NCBI RefSeq assembly: GCF_000400465.1
Contig: NW_008806288.1
Location: 150,001 to 182,000 of the forward strand
DNA from: Wallemia ichthyophaga EXF-994
Lineage: Eukaryota > Fungi > Basidiomycota
Reading direction: 5' to 3'
Length of the DNA stretch: 32,000 nt
Position 1 is the first letter of the stretch; every line of letters begins with the position of its first letter. Both the position numbers and the translations under genes were made by a program. This document shows positions 2,823 through 11,946 of the stretch, one piece after another. Under the pieces are notes generated by a model. The model ran no database searches. It saw only the letters and a list, made by a program, of their open reading frames with translations, and was not told the origin of the DNA.

Positions 2823-3289
2823 CTGATCGCCGTGGGTATCTTGATGGCGGTGTGAGTTAAAGAGAGGATATTAATTTTGGTAGAAATAGTTCTGGATTGT
2901 GGGTGCTGTGAGTGGGCTGGTTCTAAGAACGGGAGTATGAGTATGGATGTGTCTCGCTCAGAGCCCGAGTGTGGATGTGCACACGTCGGCGAATACGAGT
3001 GGATCGAGGATATGGTGACTGTGTGAGGCTAATCAGGCAGCTGCAATTACACCAGTGTTGCCCATCTTTCAATACACAGTAAACCGAGCGAGATGGATAG
3101 ATTACCGCACAAATTGGTTTAGAGGCAGGTATTTATATGAATATACAATAACAATATCTTAGAAGCCATATATACCAAAATAAATTAAAATAAATTAAAT
3201 TGAATTTGCACTTGACTGTAATTTTTGATGATGAGCCTCAGCCGCTGGGCAGCGTTCTTCGTCTTCGTCTTGAGCACTCAGATTTAAAT

Positions 3290-3645
3290 ATGGTAAAATA
3301 GACGAAACAAAACCAATTAAATCTGACACTGTGTTCAGGACGCACCAGCCGCCAACAAGCAGCCAGTCAAGCTCGCAAAGGTAACCAAGGTGGGTGGATT
3401 GTTAGGCTTGTAGGCGCTGCTGATCCAAGCTATAAAGGTCCTTGGTAGAACTGGATCCCGTGGTGGTATCACTCAAGTCCGCGTTGAATTCTTGGACGAC
3501 ACCTCCCGTTCAATCATCCGTAACGTCAAGGGTCCTGTCCGTGAATCTGACATCCTTGCATTGCTCGAATCTGAGAGAGAAGCACGGTGAGTGTGTGTGT
3601 GTGTATCATAATCCAAACTAACTCCCTCCCAGTCGTCTCCGTTAA
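3290..3645 (+). CDS. RPS28: 40S ribosomal protein S28 (eS28); 4 exons, first exon is ATG only
   Basis: Introns 3293-3338, 3390-3437 and 3587-3632 give [71 protein letters not shown], a classic eS28 sequence. Absent from the ORF track. Confidence 0.97.
3591..3604 (+). repeat. (GT)n microsatellite in RPS28 intron 3
   Basis: gtgtgtgtgtgtgt directly after the GTGA donor bases. Confidence 0.7.
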
Positions 3646-3697
3646 AAATTTTATCCAAGATGTAAATTGGAAACGATGTATATTCTTTGAGCTCGGC

Positions 3698-3886
3698 ATG
3701 ATATTCGCTGCTTTATCTTTGTTTGTGATTGGTGTGGCTGGATTAGCAACAGGCTTAGTCCTAGTCTTCACGGCGAAATCAAATTTATACCTAGAAACTG
3801 TTGTATACTCTGTTGGTCTTGTACCGCTGCTGACGATCTGGGTCATTGCACACTACGTCGCCTGGGAGCTATTCAAGCATAACTAG
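3698..3886 (+). CDS. 62-aa two-TM microprotein, probable PIG-Y/Eri1 subunit of GPI-GlcNAc transferase
   Basis: MIFAALSLFVIGVAGLATGLVLVF...YSVGLVPLLTIWVIAHYVAWELFKHN*: two hydrophobic segments and a C-terminal (W)xLFxHN ending like human PIG-Y (WMGIKLFRHN). Recognised from memory of the family. Confidence 0.65.
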   Translation: MIFAALSLFVIGVAGLATGLVLVFTAKSNLYLETVVYSVGLVPLLTIWVIAHYVAWELFKHN

Positions 3887-3903
3887 TTGTCTCATTCACT
3901 AAT

Positions 3904-5054
3904 ATGGATACGTGTCCGTCGTTTCTCGGCGCTACTCCCACACCCACTCACCCCGCCCAGCCAGAGAATACATCGCCATCGGTTTAGAAGGCTCAGCTAA
4001 TAAATTAGGCGCAGGGATAGTCAGGCACAACAAAGATGGCTCTGTCGACGTTCTCTCCAATCCCCGCCACACATACATCACTCCCCCAGGCTCTGGCTTC
4101 CTCCCTGCAGACACTGCTCGACATCACAAAGCGTGGCTCGTGAAGATTATCCAGAAATCCCTCTTCGACGCTGAGCTCTCACTTGAAGACGTCGACTGCA
4201 TTTGTTTCACTAAAGGTCCGGGTATGGGTGCTCCCCTCACTGCCGTCGCTATGGTAGCCAGGACGCTCAGTCTGCTCTACAGCAAACCACTCGTCGGCGT
4301 GAACCACTGCGTTGGTCATATAGAGATGGGCAGACTCATCACAGGTGCGCAGAACCCTATTGTGCTCTATGTGTCTGGCGGCAATACTCAAGTCATCGCC
4401 TACTCCCAACAGCGTTACAGAATATTCGGTGAAACACTCGATATCGCAGTCGGTAACTGCCTCGATAGATTTGCGAGGGTTATCGGGTTGCCTAACGATC
4501 CTAGCCCCGGTTTCAACATCGAGCAAGCTGCTAAAAAAGGTAATAAACTGCTTAAACTCCCTTACACCACTAAAGGTATGGATATATCCCTATCTGGCCT
4601 CCTCACTGCCACATCCACCTACACCACCAAACCGCAATTCAAATCAGCTGCAGAGACTCAAGATGACTTTACAAAAGAAGATCTCTGCTTCACTCTTCAA
4701 GAAGTGGCATTCGCTATGTTGGTTGAGACTACAGAGAGAGCTATGGCACATGTAGGGTCGAAGGAAGTGCTTATTGTTGGTGGTGTCGGCTGCAATAAGC
4801 GTTTACAAGAGATGATGGCAATAATGGCTGAGGAAAGAGGTGGGAAAGTGTTTGCGACGGATATGAGGTGAGTTGTGGAGATTTTGGTATTTTATCACTC
4901 ACAAATATTCAGATTCTGCATCGACAATGGTCTTATGATAGCCCAAGCTGGTCTTTTACAGCATAGAATGGGTCAGGTGACACCACTTGAGCAATCCAAC
5001 TGCAAGCAGCGGTTCAGGACAGACGAGGTATTGGTGTCGTGGAGGAGTGACTGA
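3904..5054 (+). CDS. KAE1: tRNA N6-threonylcarbamoyltransferase Kae1/OSGEP (KEOPS); 3 exons
   Basis: Motifs [55 protein letters not shown] 3904 is brought into frame by intron 3914-3960 (MDTSREYIAIG); second intron 4868-4912; TGA at 5052-5054. Confidence 0.95.
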
Positions 5055-5155: not shown

Positions 5156-5688
5156 ATGTCTTCCGGCTTTGTCAGTTCTGGCAGCGTAAACAGCAAAGAT
5201 GGCGACAAAGAGTGGAAAGAAGCGTACGAGAGGCTACAGAAGGAGCCAGAGGAGAACAAGGCCAAGGAAGAGGAGGATAAGCGACCACTAGCAGAGCAAC
5301 TATACGAACGCAAGGCAGAAAAAGACGCTGAATTTGAGCAGAAGACAAAGTTTTCGAGTGAGTAACGCATGCGAGTAACGCTCAGCTGTATCAACACGCT
5401 CACAACTCACCTCACACACCAGACCAGTTCCGCGGTCTTGAACCAGACGAAGCAGGATACCTCAATGATCTCAACGCAGGCAAGAACACCGAGACGAAGA
5501 GACGGCGAGAGGAGGAGGAGGAAGAAATAGCGCAGTTCAAGCAGGCGAGGACGAGTTCACAGCCCACGCATCCACCACGCTCACGCTCAACCAAACCACC
5601 ACCACCAGCCAACACACCCCGCACACCCAAACCACCCAAGACAAACAAGGTGAAAGGCAGTTTGAAAGGTGTAGTAAAGAAATTGTAA
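5156..5688 (+). CDS. FYV6: FAM192A/Fyv6 (NIP30)-family protein; 2 exons
   Basis: RPLAEQLYERKAEKDAEFEQKTKFS|NQFRGLEPDEAGYL resembles the FAM192A/Fyv6 N-terminal domain. Intron 5358-5422; frame stays open to ...LKGVVKKL TAA (5686-5688). Confidence 0.75.
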
Positions 5689-5689
5689 A

Positions 5690-7728
5690 ATGGCGATAAA
5701 TATCGACGACGAACATACACCGCGAGGACCGATTGCAATCAGCGACGATAGCTCAGATGATGATCAAGGTGATGTTGTAGTGGCGACGTACAAAGCAGCA
5801 GCCAGCAAGCGAGACGATGAGCGCAAACGAGAAGACAGACGCATGGGGTGTGAGGCGCGTGAGGCGCCTGGCGTTAAAGGGGAGACGGTCGATGATCGCT
5901 TGGAGAACAGCACACACACACGCACGCGGAAATCATCGAAACCTCCGCCATCGCCATCGCCGTCTCTCCCCAAGATGAAGATGAAGAAAATGGATACATC
6001 TAAGATACTGGGACAGCTCCTCAAAGAGAAGACAACAAATGATGAGCTCAGAGCGGGTGCTGCGGGCCAGGAGGATGCTTACAGGAGATTTCTGGAGAAA
6101 GAGCGGCAGCTTAATGAGGAAAAGAAACCTGAGGTTGAGGCGCTACAGGGTGAAGAAGACGCGGTTAGTTCAGACGACGATGAATTTCTCATCCACACAC
6201 CTCGATTGGAAGTGGATGGGAATGAAAATGAAAACGATGAAAATGAGCACATCAACACACACACATACAAAAATGTCGTAGCTAATGTGCTCACTACCGA
6301 CAAAGCTACGATGAAAAAGGACAAACAATACAAAAAGCACAAACCCAACTACAGCTTCTTCGATATTGCCCAATACCGCGATCCCAATACAGACACGATA
6401 ATCGACGCGTTGCTCGAGACGGTGCTAACTACAAGCGACCTTTCTCCCCTCCAAAAAGACTGCTTGGTGGAGTACAAGCGGGTGCGTTCAGAGGGTGACA
6501 TGGACAAAGAGCGTGTGTACATGTCAGTGATAGTGCGCACTGTCATTGCACACACTCGACCTCCAGTAAGTATAATGCACTTGATATTCCATTTGAGTGA
6601 GTTGCATTCTTTATGTAGTGAGTATGCTCAGCTGACGACCTACCCCTGTCAGTGATTATGCATGAACATATACCCTTCAAAGACACTGCTCTGCGCATCC
6701 TCCAAGATACCCTGCCTCAATATGACCGTGAAAGCGCTCCATTTGGATTAGCTGATCTGCTAGCACCCCTCACCTACCTCGGCATGTCGATTGCGACCGA
6801 GAGCCTTATCTACGGGGAGAGCAGGGAGAGTGGGAGGAGTGAGGAGATGGGAATGGACACACCAAATCTCACGAAAAAGGATAAAGCGGAGCTGATAGGA
6901 CAGAGTGCGCAGCGTATAAAGATACTCTCGCGACTGATCCCGCTAATGCATTCCATGACATCACTTTCGCTACTCGGTACCGGCGACACTAGCGGGCTCT
7001 TCACGACGATGGTGCTACTCTTGATGGACAGATCACTGAGCAGCATCTACCCCCAGATAGCGGCGTGTGCGAGCAATGCACTCGACTCCATCGGAAGCGG
7101 AAGGAGTGAGATTGTCACCCACAACACCCACGACGCCCTCAAAATTGATCTTCATGTCCTCGCAAATATCCTCAACGCGGCTTCGGGACATGCTCCCGCT
7201 TTCCAGCTCAGCATGTTGGAGATATTCCCGTCAGGTACACTACGCGCAATGCGCATGCGCAGATGGCTGGCATGGGCTATATTGCTCGATGGGAAACATG
7301 AGCCTATCGATACGCAGAAATATGAAAAATCACCAAACATCCAGCCCATAATAAAACAATTGAAGGATGTGGATGGTAAATTTACCGTCAATCAGCATAC
7401 AGACTATGACAATCTCACCGATTGCGTTGAAATACTTTCAATAGTGCTGACAGATTTGGAAACTTACCTCATCGAAGAGAGACATATGATAAAGTTCAAA
7501 CCGAGTATGAGTTTTGTAGATGGGGATGGTGATAATGATAGTGATAAAGATAGCATAGCCCTTCTCATCACTCTTCTCCGCTCACTCAGTGGGATGATCG
7601 TAGATACACGTAACGCTGATCTCGAAAAGAGCAGATGCAAGGATGTTTTACAAAGGCTGGAAATGAGGCTGTATTGGCAGCGCAAGACATTTGTGCAGAA
7701 TATGCAGATAGATTTGCAGAACAGGTAA
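5690..7728 (+). CDS. Uncharacterised protein of about 660 aa: acidic/disordered N-terminus, alpha-helical C-terminal half; 2 exons
   Basis: ORFs 5690..6655 and 6652..7728 are joined in frame by a 56-nt intron 6597-6652 (GTGAGT..CTGAC..CAG; HLIFHL|MIMHEH). Confidence 0.75.
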
Positions 7729-7818
7729 CTTGTCCAGTGTGTAATTTGTTTAGTTTGCATAAAGTATTTATTAGTCTTTCATACCACTAAAACTTGCAAA
7801 CCATTGGGAAAAAGCATG

Positions 7819-9225: not shown

Positions 9226-9921
9226 TCACAAATAGCCAAATAGCCACGAAGACGCGTCTTTTGATGTGTCCTGTGGCTGCTGCTTGTTTTTGTTGGTTTT
9301 TGGTTTGGGCTGCGTTTGCGCTGTTGGCTGTGTTTGCTGCGTCGGCTGCTTTTGCTGATCGTCAGTCTTCGCGCCTCTCCTTGTGAGCTGATTGGAGAGC
9401 TGGTTGGTTATGACTGTGGGTGTGTATGAGCTGATGAGCTGCGCGATATTTGAACTTTGTTCCTGATTCTGCTCCCGCTCTTGCTCGTCATCGAGTGGAA
9501 TGTACTCCTGCTGCTGCTGGGATATTGCGCTGTAAATTCGCTTAACGTAATTGACACCCAAATCATAGACGCCTCTCTTGAGCCCCCTAAGACCGTCTTC
9601 AATCTCCGTCTCGTGCCTCTGGAGCACCTCCTTCACTAAACTATCATAAACAACCTCCGAGCCTTGTAATTCGAGGTAAATAACAAAAGCTATCTTGATA
9701 TATCTGTATAATGGTATCCTGGGTTGATTGAGCTTTTATCATGTGTACACTCACAACACTCACCACCTCAACAATCCCTCTACGCAGCTCACACAGCCAA
9801 TAATCACCCAATACATCAACCAGTACGCCTGCCGCTCGGCATTCCCAACGTTGAGGCACTTGTACGACTTATAAATTGGTATCAAGAATGTGACGAGCAC
9901 GTTCAACAACGTCAAGATCAT
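9226..9921 (-). CDS. TB2/DP1/HVA22 (REEP/Yop1-family) ER-shaping protein; 2 exons
   Basis: MILTLLNVLVTFLIPIYKSYKCL...YWLMYWVIIG...|WIPLYRYIKIAFVIYL...GSEVVYDSLVKEVLQRHETEIE; 45-nt intron 9763-9719; exon 2 is in frame with track ORF 9226..9636. Confidence 0.85.
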
Positions 9922-9945
9922 CGTTATATATCAAAAAGTGTCTTT

Positions 9946-11946
9946 TTACATTTTGTCAGTGTATAAGTTGACTACCTTGTTCAAATAGCTTGGATAAATC
10001 TCTGTTAATATGCAAATACTGTAGAGATCCTCATTGTCCAACAACTTGACTGTTATTTTGGCTGTATTCCCCTTAATTCCCTCCGCCTTGATCTTCTTAA
10101 ACAGCCTCTCTCCTATTTTTTGCTTCTGTTTCTTACTTTCCAATCCCTGTAATCCTTCGAACCAATCCTGTGTGTGTCTGAAAATATCCTCATTGAGCAA
10201 TCCCATCTCATTAACTGCCATTTTGAGCGCATCTTGAGCCCTCATTTGCTCATCGTTTCCGCCTTCTTTATTCTTTTCATCCTTTGCATCTTTTTCGTTA
10301 TCGCACTCGACCTCGACGAGCACCTTGGCATCTCTCACCTTCTGTATGAGGTATTCATTCGAAAAAAGACACATGGCTCTCTCCTTCTTCCCGAGCTGGC
10401 CGAGCATTTCACCAATCTTCTTGTAATCACGTTCGCCAAGGTTCTGTACAGCGATGATGAGACGACCCGATTCTTCTGAAGCTGGTGTTATGACATCTGT
10501 TGAGCTGCCTACAACGCTGTTATCGATTCTGAGAGCATTCAAGTGTGCCTCAACAGGAGCCCCGTGTGTGCCCTTGTAGCACCTCAGCAAAGCGTCTCTG
10601 TTGTGCAAACATTCGACGAGATTATCCAGTCCGTACGTGCTTATCAATCTGTCGACAGCATCAACTACATCAATATCACTCACCCCCACATCGTGAAGTG
10701 ATCGCAACAGATGTCCACCGAGCATCTCACTGCGCATCGAAGCAGTCATCGTCTTGAATTCACCCAGCGATGGTGCCATATGAGCAGACAGCGCGGCTTT
10801 GAAATAGGAACCTGATCCGCGTCTGCCATTTACAGTAACACCACCACCACCACCACCACCACCCATGCTCGGCGTGGCTGATAGAGGTGGGGAGTTTAGA
10901 TTAGAATTCATCCCGTAGTCGCTGGGTATTGGACTGATAGGACTGCTCACACCCAGTCTGTCGTTTTTAGAAAACCTCGCAGCCAGTTTCTCCTGACGCA
11001 GTTGTTTAGGTTCGTGGAAACGTACTGTTATCGCTTTCGTCCTGACACCGACCCCGTTCATGGCATTCAGGGCCGCCTTGGCAGATTCGGGTGACTGGTA
11101 GCTGACGAAACCGAAGCCGCGCGACTGGTCGTTTTCGTCGCGCATCACCCTCGCAGAGACAATATGACCAAACGACTTGAACGCGTCGAAGAGATCATTA
11201 GACGCGAGGGAATGGTCAAGATTCTTCACAAAGAGGTTGCAGGGGTCTATAAGGTTGGAGCCTGTGTATTGCACCTGCTGACCTGGGCCGTGGCCGAAGT
11301 AGGAGGGTGTATGGGGTGTATGTAAGCCAGTGGTTGTGTTTGAGTGCGTGTTTGGAACAAAAGCAGCAGCTTTTGGGTGTAAATGGGAAGACTCCTTGCT
11401 GGAATCATACTTTGTAACTGAAATGGTGCAGTTCTCATACTCAGTACAGTGGAGATCCTCCTCCAAGCGCAAAGAAGTGCTTTCATCCCAAGCCCAGACC
11501 ACAGCGACACCTGAATTAACCATTTTGATCGAGTAGAGAGGGCCACACGTCCTACACAGATCATAAACCTCATTAGGCGTGATAGATTGTGGAAGATTTC
11601 TGAAAAAGCGGGGAGTAGTGGCTGGCGGTGGAGGTATATGCGCAACTTGGTCTTGGGAATCGTAAGGGAGAAGACCGAGCGTGGTTTCATGTTCAGGGAA
11701 TGTGATTTGGGGGTAGATAGTTAATGCCTTCTCCGCTGAATAGAGCTGCTTGAACTGTACATCGGCGTGGATGGGTATACCGATAGCATCTTGCTCTGTA
11801 TGCGCGACAACTCGCACTGGGAGACAGCCAACCAGCTGAGAGGCGATCTCCTGGGAAGTGATGGTATGTGAGCGTAGACCACTGATACAAAGCTTGGGCG
11901 TTTGGAGTATTGGGTGTGGAGGGTATGTGGATATATCACAGTCCAT
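9946..11946 (-). CDS. RRM4: Rrm4-like RNA-binding protein (3 RRM plus C-terminal MLLE/PABC domains), endosomal mRNA transport
   Basis: RRM3 DPCNLFVKNL...FGHIVSARVMRDENDQSRGFGFVSY...HEPKQLRQEKLAARF and terminal MLLE QKQKIGERLFKKIK...KITVKLLDNEDL match the Ustilago Rrm4 architecture as I recall it. Two further MLLE-like helical blocks lie upstream. Confidence 0.8.
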   Translation of the reverse strand: MDCDISTYPPHPILQTPKLCISGLRSHTITSQEIASQLVGCLPVRVVAHTEQDAIGIPIHADVQFKQLYSAEKALTIYPQITFPEHETTLGLLPYDSQDQVAHIPPPPATTPRFFRNLPQSITPNEVYDLCRTCGPLYSIKMVNSGVAVVWAWDESTSLRLEEDLHCTEYENCTISVTKYDSSKESSHLHPKAAAFVPNTHSNTTTGLHTPHTPSYFGHGPGQQVQYTGSNLIDPCNLFVKNLDHSLASNDLFDAFKSFGHIVSARVMRDENDQSRGFGFVSYQSPESAKAALNAMNGVGVRTKAITVRFHEPKQLRQEKLAARFSKNDRLGVSSPISPIPSDYGMNSNLNSPPLSATPSMGGGGGGGGVTVNGRRGSGSYFKAALSAHMAPSLGEFKTMTASMRSEMLGGHLLRSLHDVGVSDIDVVDAVDRLISTYGLDNLVECLHNRDALLRCYKGTHGAPVEAHLNALRIDNSVVGSSTDVITPASEESGRLIIAVQNLGERDYKKIGEMLGQLGKKERAMCLFSNEYLIQKVRDAKVLVEVECDNEKDAKDEKNKEGGNDEQMRAQDALKMAVNEMGLLNEDIFRHTQDWFEGLQGLESKKQKQKIGERLFKKIKAEGIKGNTAKITVKLLDNEDLYSICILTEIYPSYLNKVVNLYTDKM

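What the first reader, a model, noticed from the sequence alone, without database searches (positions are those of the whole stretch)
5680..5695. Stop-start junction TAA-A-ATG between FYV6 and the unknown 660-aa gene
Seen: FYV6 exon 2 is open to ...GGT GTA GTA AAG AAA TTG TAA (5686-5688), then a single A, then ATG GCG ATA (5690), which opens a 321-codon ORF. Known: termination-reinitiation at overlapping or adjacent stop-start signals is used by fungal viruses and caliciviruses but is rare for nuclear genes. Inference: candidate cellular translational coupling.
Basis: partly seen in the sequence, partly recalled or inferred. Interest (0 to 1): 0.7.

Follow-up and report, generated by a model that had tools for sequence, protein, structure and literature searches.

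The report
Two fungal genes abutting stop-to-start
In the salt-loving fungus Wallemia ichthyophaga the stop codon of the splicing-factor gene FYV6 is followed one base later by the start codon of a separate conserved gene; five Wallemia lineages keep this arrangement (overlap of 1 base to a gap of 12) and both reference genomes annotate it as one fused gene, but sequence alone cannot show whether the second protein comes from ribosomes restarting on a shared mRNA or from its own transcript starting inside FYV6.

Summary
FYV6 (5156-5688, one intron) ends TAA at 5686-5688. One A follows, and ATG 5690 opens a 660-aa two-exon gene, here called X. The window is W. ichthyophaga EXF-994. The junction is kept in five diverged Wallemia lineages: TAA-A-ATG, TAG-TAAA-ATG, TGATG, TAATG and TAA-N12-ATG. 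The FYV6 tail is conserved up to its stop, and the X N-terminus, a SUMO-interaction-like motif, is conserved from Met1.

Both reference annotations fuse the two genes by inventing a 58-59-nt intron. That intron lacks the splice signals of 20 real neighbouring introns, so I judge the fusion an artefact. Frameshifting, readthrough, a downstream start and leaky scanning are not supported. No reinitiation-promoting RNA element was found.

The junction is the extreme of a local pattern. Five of eight tandem gene pairs nearby have gaps of 52 nt or less, and two other pairs reach 1-3 nt in sister species.

My best reading (about 0.5) is two separate genes, with X translated from a transcript that starts inside FYV6 and has a 222-nt AUG-free leader. 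A bicistronic mRNA with termination-reinitiation remains a live rival (about 0.3). No transcript data could be reached.

The parts
5156..5357 (+). FYV6 exon 1 (ATG 5156)
   Evidence: ORF and splice model; PF10187 E=1.5e-24 on the spliced 155-aa product
5358..5422 (+). FYV6 intron (GTGAGT ... CTCAC ... CAG, 65 nt)
   Evidence: Restores the conserved NQFRGL motif; signals match other local introns
5423..5688 (+). FYV6 exon 2 including stop TAA 5686-5688; tail KVKGSLKGVVKKL*
   Evidence: Tail conserved to the stop in window, L001, L002, L014 and L010, and in the part of L003 that is available
5468..5689 (+). 222-nt ATG-free stretch inside FYV6 exon 2 directly upstream of the X start codon (candidate 5' leader of X)
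   Evidence: Last upstream ATG is 5465-5467; a random site in the window has 220 or more ATG-free nt upstream with P=0.035
5689..5689 (+). Single-base spacer (A) between stop and start
   Evidence: Spacer is 4 nt in L001 and 12 nt in L003; stop and start overlap by 1 nt in L002 (TGATG) and L014 (TAATG)
5690..6596 (+). Gene X exon 1; start ATG 5690-5692 in context gtaaaATGg (A at -3, G at +4)
   Evidence: N-terminal half conserved in four species
5693..5764 (+). Two SUMO-interaction-like motifs at the X N-terminus (AINIDDE, GPIAISDDSSDDD)
   Evidence: Conserved as M[AVI][IV][NS]ID.D... KGPI[VA]ISD[DS]S.D with synonymous changes and a 3-nt indel; function is inferred from motif shape only
5669..5726 (+). 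58-nt 'intron' (GTGTAG...GCGAG) that, added to the two real introns, gives exactly the annotated product length of the fused 797-aa EXF-994 model; judged not real
   Evidence: Reconstruction gives exactly 797 aa; no G at +5 and no CTNAY branch motif, unlike 17/20 and 18/20 real introns
6597..6652 (+). Gene X intron (GTGAGT ... CTGAC ... CAG, 56 nt, phase 1)
   Evidence: Same position and phase in L001 and L002
6653..7728 (+). Gene X exon 2: all-alpha helical-repeat domain; stop 7726-7728
   Evidence: 102 homologues at E<=0.001, mostly the C-termini of 900-1200-aa Agaricomycete proteins; AF2 pLDDT 79, pTM 0.80; no PDB fold match
3290..5054 (+). Upstream members of the same-strand array: RPS28 (3290-3645), a 62-aa two-TM ORF (3698-3886) and KAE1 (3904-5054). 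CDS-to-CDS gaps are 52, 17 and 101 nt

Best explanation
FYV6 and X are two separate protein-coding genes packed end to end in a hyper-compact genome. FYV6 really stops at 5686-5688 and X really starts at ATG 5690. The fused FYV6-X gene models in the W. ichthyophaga and W. mellicola reference annotations are gene-prediction artefacts.

X is most likely translated by ordinary cap-dependent scanning on a transcript whose 5' end lies inside FYV6 exon 2 or its intron. The 222-nt AUG-free stretch before ATG 5690 would serve as its leader, and ATG 5690 would be the first AUG, in a good context. FYV6 mRNA would then end inside the first codons of X, so the two transcripts overlap.

Shown:
- the anatomy of the locus;
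- conservation of both ORF ends;
- the non-intron character of the bridging segment;
- the general tightness of tandem gene spacing here.

Inferred: where the X transcript starts.
For: 1. Both ORF boundaries are conserved. The FYV6 tail KVKGSLKG[VI][VI][KR]K[LK]* runs to the stop in the five lineages where it is fully seen, including the outgroup with a 90-nt spacer. X is conserved from Met1, the only conserved Met.
2. Between stop and start the length varies by non-multiples of 3 (-1, 1, 4, 12). Inside the X head the only indel is one codon.
3. The bridging 'intron' lacks +5G and CTNAY (0/4 and 0/3), against 17/20 and 18/20 real introns. Seventeen different in-frame intron sets reproduce the JGI product length. 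Strain annotations bridge the junction differently from one another.
4. Agaricomycete X homologues carry no FYV6 domain.
5. Tight tandem spacing is general here: 1, 17, 24, 46, 52 and 101 nt, against divergent gaps of 189-787 nt. One case follows a 666-codon ORF: 24 nt here and 3 nt in L002. That calls for a mechanism independent of upstream translation.
6. Long AUG-free stretches precede three of the tightly packed starts: X 222 nt (P=0.035), KAE1 203 nt (P=0.048) and the SRF1-like gene 309 nt (P=0.012).
7. The genome is about three-quarters CDS (PMC3849046).
Against: - No transcript start, poly(A) site or read coverage could be examined.
- No spliced FYV6 or X product exists in the 15-billion-protein collection.
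- Nothing in FYV6 exon 2 was shown to be a promoter.
- Persistence of spacing of 12 nt or less across lineages as far apart as about 65% nucleotide identity, including precise TGATG and TAATG overlaps, is also what translational coupling predicts.
- Divergent gaps are long and tandem gaps tiny, a pattern that looks operon-like.
Confidence: 0.5

Rival explanations
1. Bicistronic FYV6-X mRNA with termination-reinitiation. Ribosomes that finish FYV6 at the stop keep the 40S subunit on the mRNA and restart at the adjacent or overlapping AUG. X would then be made at a fixed low ratio to FYV6.
For: - Stop and start stay within -1 to +12 nt in five lineages, inside the roughly 20-30-nt range that viral termination-reinitiation needs (PMC10275272).
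- W. mellicola has exactly the UAAUG of hypovirus CHV1 (PMC2699510).
- Fungal ribosomes support this mechanism for mycoviruses (PMC2699510).
- The five-gene same-strand array has tiny spacers behind a gap of roughly 470 nt to the divergently oriented RhoGEF gene.
- In the outgroup L010 the FYV6 TAG is followed at once by the ATG of a 28-codon ORF that stops 3 nt before the X ATG.
- Polycistronic transcripts exist in other basidiomycetes (PMC4503453, PMC11590231).
Against: - The upstream ORF is 155 codons, and reinitiation after long ORFs normally needs a cis element. No UGGGA motif lies within 120 nt upstream. Predicted RNA structure is no stronger than shuffled sequence, with z from -0.6 to +0.7.
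- The same tight spacing follows a 666-codon ORF upstream of HVA22, where reinitiation is unlikely to give enough product.
- Co-transcription is untested.
Confidence: 0.3
2. One fused gene, as annotated. A short intron (5669-5726 in the window) removes the FYV6 stop and the first 12 codons of X, giving a FYV6-X fusion protein. This could be alternative to the unspliced FYV6-only form.
For: - Both reference annotations carry a single model: 797 aa in EXF-994 and 720 aa in CBS 633.66.
- In-frame GT..AG pairs joining ...SLK(G) to GPI[VA]IS exist in the window, L001 and L002.
- In L010 a 105-nt in-frame candidate has a CTCAT motif near its 3' end.
Against: - The candidate donors lack +5G and there is no CTNAY motif in the three Wallemia candidates.
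- The donor GT of the window and L002 is absent in L001 (GGC). Acceptor phases differ between species.
- The segment to be removed is conserved at the amino-acid level in two frames.
- Seventeen alternative in-frame solutions exist for one species, and strain models disagree.
- X homologues outside Wallemia have no FYV6 domain.
- The predictor behind the population annotations also fuses other neighbours (1077-, 1163- and 1547-aa models).
Confidence: 0.1
3. Leaky scanning on a bicistronic mRNA, as in green algae. Some 40S subunits skip the FYV6 AUG and all intervening AUGs and start at ATG 5690.
For: - The FYV6 AUG has a weak context in the window (C at -3, T at +4).
- FYV6 has no internal Met, and only 2-4 out-of-frame AUGs occur.
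Against: - With a synonymous-codon null the AUG count is not depleted (P=0.17, 0.90, 0.08).
- The first internal AUG in the window has a strong context, aagATGg.
- The FYV6 AUG has a purine at -3 in L001, L002 and L010.
Confidence: 0.05
4. Recoding (frameshift or stop-codon readthrough) gives a fusion protein, or X starts at a downstream Met and the junction is irrelevant.
For: None beyond the proximity of the two ORFs.
Against: - The frame offset of ATG relative to the stop is +1, +1, +2, +2 and 0 in different lineages. L001 and L003 have a second in-frame stop.
- Downstream Mets of the window (M52, M96, M98, M101) are not conserved, while residues 1-35 are.
Confidence: 0.03

Closest known systems
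Coupled termination-reinitiation at UAAUG in hypovirus CHV1 and AUGA/UAAUG in victoriviruses (PMC2699510; review PMC10275272)
   Same: Two long ORFs are joined by an overlapping or adjacent stop-start; W. mellicola has literally UAAUG. The host kingdom is fungi.
   Different: This is a nuclear gene pair, not a viral RNA. No upstream stimulatory sequence or structure was found. Co-transcription and dependence on upstream termination are untested.
TURBS-dependent reinitiation of caliciviruses and influenza B (PMC10275272, PMC2793014)
   Same: Stop and start lie within 20 nt after a long ORF.
   Different: The defining UGGGA-type 18S-complementary motif is absent within 120 nt upstream, and the RNA structure score is no better than shuffles.
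Polycistronic transcription units of Agaricomycetes (Gordon et al. 2015, PMC4503453; Ganoderma lingzhi, PMC11590231)
   Same: Basidiomycete tandem genes of normal size with conserved adjacency, which gene predictors tend to merge.
   Different: Mean inter-ORF distances there are 364 and 434 nt, and the genes are also transcribed independently. Here the distance is -1 to 12 nt. Wallemiomycetes were not studied. How downstream ORFs of those units are translated is unknown.
Polycistronic loci of green algae (PMC7896298, PMC11291117)
   Same: Conserved nuclear gene pairs with short inter-ORF spacers.
   Different: Those use leaky scanning. Here the upstream ORF is not AUG-depleted under a synonymous null, and one internal AUG has a strong context.
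Overlapping transcription in compacted eukaryotic genomes (microsporidia, nucleomorphs; cited in PMC2803860 and from my own knowledge of Williams et al. 2005)
   Same: Intergenic spacers are too short to hold terminators and promoters, so transcripts start or end inside neighbouring genes.
   Different: Wallemia is a free-living basidiomycete with 9.6 Mb and normal introns. Overlapping transcripts have not been reported for it in the library searched.

Membership tests
Termination-reinitiation after a long ORF (viral type) | Stop of ORF1 and start of ORF2 overlap or lie within about 20-30 nt | tested here: met
   Spacing is -1, -1, 1, 4 and 12 nt in five lineages
Termination-reinitiation after a long ORF (viral type) | Both ORFs are on one mRNA | not testable with these tools
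   No transcript data; no spliced products in the protein collection
Termination-reinitiation after a long ORF (viral type) | Upstream cis element that tethers the 40S subunit (TURBS UGGGA motif, pseudoknot or hairpin) | tested here: not met
   No TGGGA within 120 nt in any lineage; fold z-scores -0.59, -0.25, 0.09 and 0.72. Complementarity to Wallemia 18S rRNA itself was not tested.
Termination-reinitiation after a long ORF (viral type) | ORF2 translation depends on termination of ORF1 nearby | not testable with these tools
   Needs a reporter or ribosome profiling
Leaky-scanning polycistron (green-algal type) | Upstream ORF has a weak start context and is depleted of AUGs in all frames | tested here: not met
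   2, 4 and 2 internal AUGs against 3.9, 2.9 and 4.3 expected under synonymous resampling (P=0.17, 0.90, 0.08); one in strong context; the FYV6 AUG is weak only in the window
Fungal polycistronic transcription unit (Agaricomycete type) | Same-strand adjacent genes with adjacency conserved between species | tested here: met
   The order RhoGEF(-) / KAE1 / FYV6 / X is kept in the window, L001, L002, L014 and L010; RPS28 was located upstream of KAE1 in all of these except L010
Fungal polycistronic transcription unit (Agaricomycete type) | Full-length transcripts spanning both ORFs | not testable with these tools
   No long-read data accessible
Single fused gene with an intron over the junction (current annotation) | Intron carries the splice signals used in this genome | tested here: not met
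   +5G in 0/4 and CTNAY in 0/3 candidates, against 17/20 and 18/20 real introns
Single fused gene with an intron over the junction (current annotation) | Splice sites are conserved and the removed segment is free of coding constraint | tested here: not met
   Donor GT is lost in L001; acceptor phase differs; the removed segment encodes a conserved FYV6 tail and a conserved X head with a codon-sized indel
Single fused gene with an intron over the junction (current annotation) | Homologues elsewhere combine both domains | tested here: not met
   Nine X homologues of 647-1229 aa have no PF10187 hit
Programmed frameshift or readthrough | Constant frame relation between the ORFs and a single stop | tested here: not met
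   Offsets are +1, +1, +2, +2 and 0; there are double stops in L001 and L003
FAM192A/Fyv6 family (upstream gene) | N-terminal FAM192A_Fyv6_N domain | tested here: met
   PF10187 at 86.6 bits against a cutoff of 20.2, covering profile positions 1-104 of 104; human PSME3IP1 chain 7w59_X at E=5.5e-7

The most novel reading that the evidence does not exclude
Wallemia expresses part of its genome as operon-like arrays. One example is RPS28, a PIG-Y-like ORF, KAE1, FYV6 and X; another is the RRM protein, HVA22 and the SRF1-like gene. Tandem genes separated by -1 to about 50 nt would be co-transcribed, and downstream cistrons would be translated by stop-start coupled reinitiation after full-length ORFs without a TURBS-like element. 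This would be a cellular counterpart of the mycovirus UAAUG mechanism.
Probability: 0.25. Interest if true: 0.85.

Novelty: new variant of a known kind. Interest (0 to 1): 0.55.

Why it matters
If X is made by reinitiation, this would be a conserved cellular example of coupled termination-reinitiation after a long ORF. That mechanism is otherwise documented almost only for viruses and retroelements. Here the stop-start spacing also varies naturally (TGATG, TAATG, +1, +4, +12, +90), which gives a ready-made test series.

If X has its own transcript, the locus shows how far a free-living eukaryote can compress tandem genes. A promoter and 5' leader would lie inside one coding sequence, and a 3' end would lie inside the next.

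In either case both Wallemia reference annotations carry a fused gene model here that I judge wrong. Other fusions occur nearby, and an apparently unannotated small ORF sits next to KAE1. These errors affect orthology tables, proteome counts and any gene-family analysis that uses these genomes.

Tried and rejected
- Whole-protein searches with the spliced 660-aa X found nothing. Exon-level ORF searches worked instead.
- Exact look-ups of spliced FYV6 and X from three species found no entry, so they gave no transcript-derived evidence.
- A metagenome scan with the X N-terminal alignment found no relative.
- The supplementary tables of the W. ichthyophaga transcriptome paper contain nothing for FYV6, KAE1 or this locus.
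- A mononucleotide-shuffle test suggested AUG depletion in FYV6. The more appropriate synonymous-codon null removed that signal, so leaky scanning was dropped.
- The GTA and ATA codons around the junction looked like nucleotide-level constraint. They are ordinary codons here (GTA 17-27% of Val, ATA 29-44% of Ile).
- No significant RNA structure and no TURBS motif were found.
- Pfam, a PDB sequence profile and a PDB fold search did not name X.
- I could not work out which intron set JGI used for its 720-aa model, because 17 sets fit.
Full report
**Observation.** The sequence reads ...GGT GTA GTA AAG AAA TTG TAA (5686-5688), then A (5689), then ATG GCG ATA (5690-), exactly as described. The ATG opens a 321-codon ORF.
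- The upstream gene is FYV6: exon 1 5156-5357, a 65-nt GTGAGT...CAG intron, and exon 2 5423-5688.
- Its 155-aa product matches Pfam FAM192A_Fyv6_N over the whole profile (E=1.5e-24). It also matches the human spliceosome-associated PSME3IP1/FAM192A chain 7w59_X (E=5.5e-7).
- The downstream gene, X, continues after a 56-nt phase-1 intron (6597-6652) into a second exon ending at 7728, giving 660 aa. The same intron position and phase occur in two sister species.

**Source.** Exact look-ups of neighbouring ORFs place the window in Wallemia ichthyophaga. It is identical over 15,361 nt to scaffold KE007238.1 of strain EXF-994. This genome is 9.6 Mb, with about three-quarters coding sequence (PMC3849046).

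**Conservation of the junction.** The exon-1 ORF of X found relatives in Logan and ENA assemblies, and their contigs were fetched.

| Locus | Relation to the window | Junction |
|---|---|---|
| Window (EXF-994) | W. ichthyophaga | TTG TAA a ATG |
| L004-L009 | same species, 99.5% nt identity (measured on L004) | identical, with one A2V polymorphism |
| L001 | 72% nt identity | TTG TAG taaa ATG |
| L002 | W. sebi complex | AAG TGATG G, stop and start overlapping |
| L014 | W. mellicola CBS 633.66, 92.6% identical to L002 | AAG TAATG G |
| L003 | metagenome contig | TTG TAA + 12 nt + ATG |
| L010-L013 | AT-rich outgroup with the same gene order | 90-nt spacer, and 14 extra N-terminal residues on X |

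- The FYV6 tail KVKGSLKG[VI][VI][KR]K[LK] runs to the stop codon in every lineage, including the outgroup.
- X is conserved from its first residue: M[AVI][IV][NS]ID.D..., then KGPI[VA]ISD[DS]S.D. These are two hydrophobic-then-acidic motifs of the kind that bind SUMO.
- Met1 is the only conserved Met.
- Between stop and start the length changes by non-multiples of three. Inside the X head the single indel is one codon.
- The frame offset between the two ORFs differs between lineages (+1, +1, +2, +2, 0). Two lineages have a second in-frame stop. This excludes a conserved frameshift or readthrough.

**The public annotations.** Both reference genomes annotate one fused gene: 797 aa in EXF-994 and 720 aa in CBS 633.66.
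- Adding a 58-nt 'intron' 5669-5726 (GTGTAG...GCGAG) to the two real introns gives exactly the annotated 797-aa length, joining ...KVKGSLK to GPIAISDD.
- I compared this segment and its counterparts with 20 real introns from the window, L001, L002 and L010. Real introns are 43-65 nt. They have G at +5 in 17 of 20 cases and a CTNAY motif 12-27 nt from the 3' end in 18 of 20. The candidates have neither (+5G 0/4; CTNAY 0/3 in Wallemia).
- The donor GT of the window and L002 is GGC in L001, and acceptor phases differ between species.
- Seventeen different in-frame intron sets reproduce the JGI product length.
- Strain-level annotations bridge the junction in mutually inconsistent ways. They also fuse KAE1 and even RPS28 into the same 'protein' (1077 and 940 aa).
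- X homologues in Agaricomycetes are 900-1200-aa proteins without any FYV6 domain.
- I conclude that the fusion is an artefact of ab initio prediction in a genome without intergenic space. I leave about 10% for a real, perhaps alternative, splice. The 105-nt in-frame candidate in the outgroup L010 is the least implausible case.

**What X is.**
- Its C-terminal 357 residues have 102 homologues at E<=0.001.
- The predicted structure is a confident all-alpha helical repeat (pLDDT 79, pTM 0.80). It has no convincing PDB neighbour (best E=0.076), no Pfam family and no PDB sequence match.
- Agaricomycete homologues begin with a K..ITDFF.R motif that looks like a PCNA-interaction box, followed by repeated [VI][VI]S[SD]-type motifs.
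- X is therefore probably a SUMO-binding (and, in Agaricomycetes, possibly PCNA-binding) chromatin or repair adaptor. That is inference from motifs only. No functional link to FYV6 is evident.

**How X could be expressed.**
- *Leaky scanning.* A mononucleotide shuffle suggested AUG depletion in FYV6. A synonymous-codon null does not (P=0.17, 0.90, 0.08). The first internal AUG in the window sits in a strong context. I reject leaky scanning as the main route.
- *Termination-reinitiation.* The spacing requirement is met in all five lineages, and W. mellicola even has the hypovirus pentanucleotide UAAUG (PMC2699510). But there is no UGGGA-type motif within 120 nt, and predicted structure around the junction is no stronger than in shuffled sequence (z from -0.59 to +0.72).
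- *Local context.* In the EXF-994 annotation plus my corrections, the tandem CDS-to-CDS gaps are:
  - 559 nt;
  - 339 nt;
  - 101 nt (KAE1 to FYV6);
  - 52 nt (RPS28 to a 62-aa ORF);
  - 46 nt (HVA22 to the SRF1-like gene);
  - 24 nt (RRM protein to HVA22);
  - 17 nt (62-aa ORF to KAE1);
  - 1 nt (FYV6 to X).
- Divergent gaps are 189-787 nt, and convergent stop-to-stop gaps go down to 48 and 90 nt.
- Two other pairs become as tight as FYV6-X in sister species. TAG-a-ATG lies between the 62-aa ORF and KAE1 in L001 and L002. TAG-aca-ATG lies between the 666-codon RRM gene and HVA22 in L002.
- A start codon 3-24 nt after a 666-codon ORF can hardly depend on reinitiation or leaky scanning. Transcripts that begin inside the upstream coding sequence must therefore be a normal solution in this genome.
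- Consistent with scanning from such internal starts, the ATG-free stretch upstream of the start codon is unusually long for three of the tightly packed genes: X 222 nt (P=0.035), KAE1 203 nt (P=0.048) and the SRF1-like gene 309 nt (P=0.012).
- *Weights.* By parsimony I favour a nested transcription start for X (about 0.5). I keep bicistronic reinitiation as a serious rival (about 0.3). The long-divergent, tiny-tandem pattern also looks operon-like, and basidiomycetes are known to make polycistronic transcripts. Those have 364-434-nt spacers and an unknown mode of translation (PMC4503453, PMC11590231).

**Limits.**
- No RNA evidence of any kind was reachable.
- The protein collection holds no spliced FYV6 or X product from three species, and the transcriptome paper's tables do not list the locus.
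- The literature library has nothing on polycistronic or overlapping transcription in Wallemia.
- All statements about transcripts are therefore inference.

**Verdict.** The junction is real, conserved and currently mis-annotated as a gene fusion. It is the extreme case of a general end-to-end packing of tandem genes in Wallemia.
- Translational coupling is neither shown nor excluded.
- I rate it a new variant of known kinds (compact-genome overlapping transcription, or fungal polycistrons), with interest 0.55.
- The most novel reading not excluded is cellular stop-start reinitiation in operon-like arrays. I give it a probability of about 0.25.

Noticed in passing
window 3698-3886 (+); L001 4109-4297; L002 about 4173-4361: A conserved 62-aa two-transmembrane ORF lies between RPS28 and KAE1, with a C-terminus GL[VL]PLLT.WVIA.Y.AWELFK.N. 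Neither reference gene list has a gene called there. It has weak full-length Pfam hits to PIG-Y (PF15159, E=0.003-0.05, below the cutoff). Its stop is 17 nt before the KAE1 ATG in the window and 1 nt before it (TAGaATG) in L001 and L002. This is a second stop-start junction in the same array.
   Followed up: partly
window 3904-3960 (+): KAE1 starts with a 10-nt first exon (ATGGATACGT) followed by a 47-nt intron with a weak donor, GTCCGT. The same 10-nt exon structure occurs in L001 and L002, and the JGI model MHNSKDY... fits it.
   Followed up: partly
window 9921-9948 (-); L002 10702-10710 (-): The 666-aa RRM-protein gene stops 24 nt before the HVA22 start codon in the window, and 3 nt before it (TAGacaATG) in L002. 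HVA22 stops 46 nt before the SRF1-like gene. Tight tandem junctions are therefore a regional, probably genome-wide, feature.
   Followed up: partly
window 2937-3645, 5156-7728 and neighbours; proteins P0125, P0142, P0155, P0161: Public gene models merge neighbours repeatedly. FYV6+X is merged in both reference genomes. In strain annotations RPS28+KAE1+FYV6+X is a single 1077-aa model, the RRM protein is merged with downstream genes (1163 aa), and the proteasome ATPase gene appears to be merged with a neighbour, apparently the ubiquitin hydrolase (1547 aa). RPS28 is annotated as 96 aa in EXF-994, against 68 aa in W. mellicola.
   Followed up: partly
L010 4908-5003 (also L011-L013): In the AT-rich outgroup the FYV6 TAG is followed at once by the ATG of a 28-codon ORF whose TAG lies 3 nt before the X ATG. 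FYV6, this ORF and X share one frame. In shuffles of the spacer, an ATG start plus 27 or more open codons occurs at P=0.003, a post hoc figure. The same 105 nt could instead be an in-frame intron (GTAATC...CTCATTTAG).
   Followed up: partly
window 3646-3697 (+): The 52-nt spacer between the RPS28 stop and the 62-aa ORF holds two mini-ORFs: ATGTAA at 3660-3665 and ATGTATATTCTTTGA at 3676-3690. The second is kept in L001 and nearly so in L002. The first is kept in L001, and L002 has ATGACTGTAA at that place. They may be RPS28 3'-end signals or uORFs.
   Followed up: no
window 7729-7818: The stop codons of X (+) and the SRF1-like gene (-) are only 90 nt apart. Another convergent pair in the scaffold is 48 nt apart, so 3' UTRs of convergent genes must overlap.
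   Followed up: no
proteins P0008, P0010, P0019, P0021, P0025, P0028 (Agaricomycete homologues of X): The long homologues begin with a K..ITDFF.R motif (PIP-box-like), followed by several [VI][VI]S[SD]-type SUMO-interaction-like repeats. Wallemia X keeps only the latter. The family has no Pfam model and no solved structure.
   Followed up: partly
window 5693-5695: Codon 2 of X is GCG (Ala) in EXF-994 but GTG (Val) in six other W. ichthyophaga assemblies. Val or Ile is the state in the sister species.
   Followed up: yes
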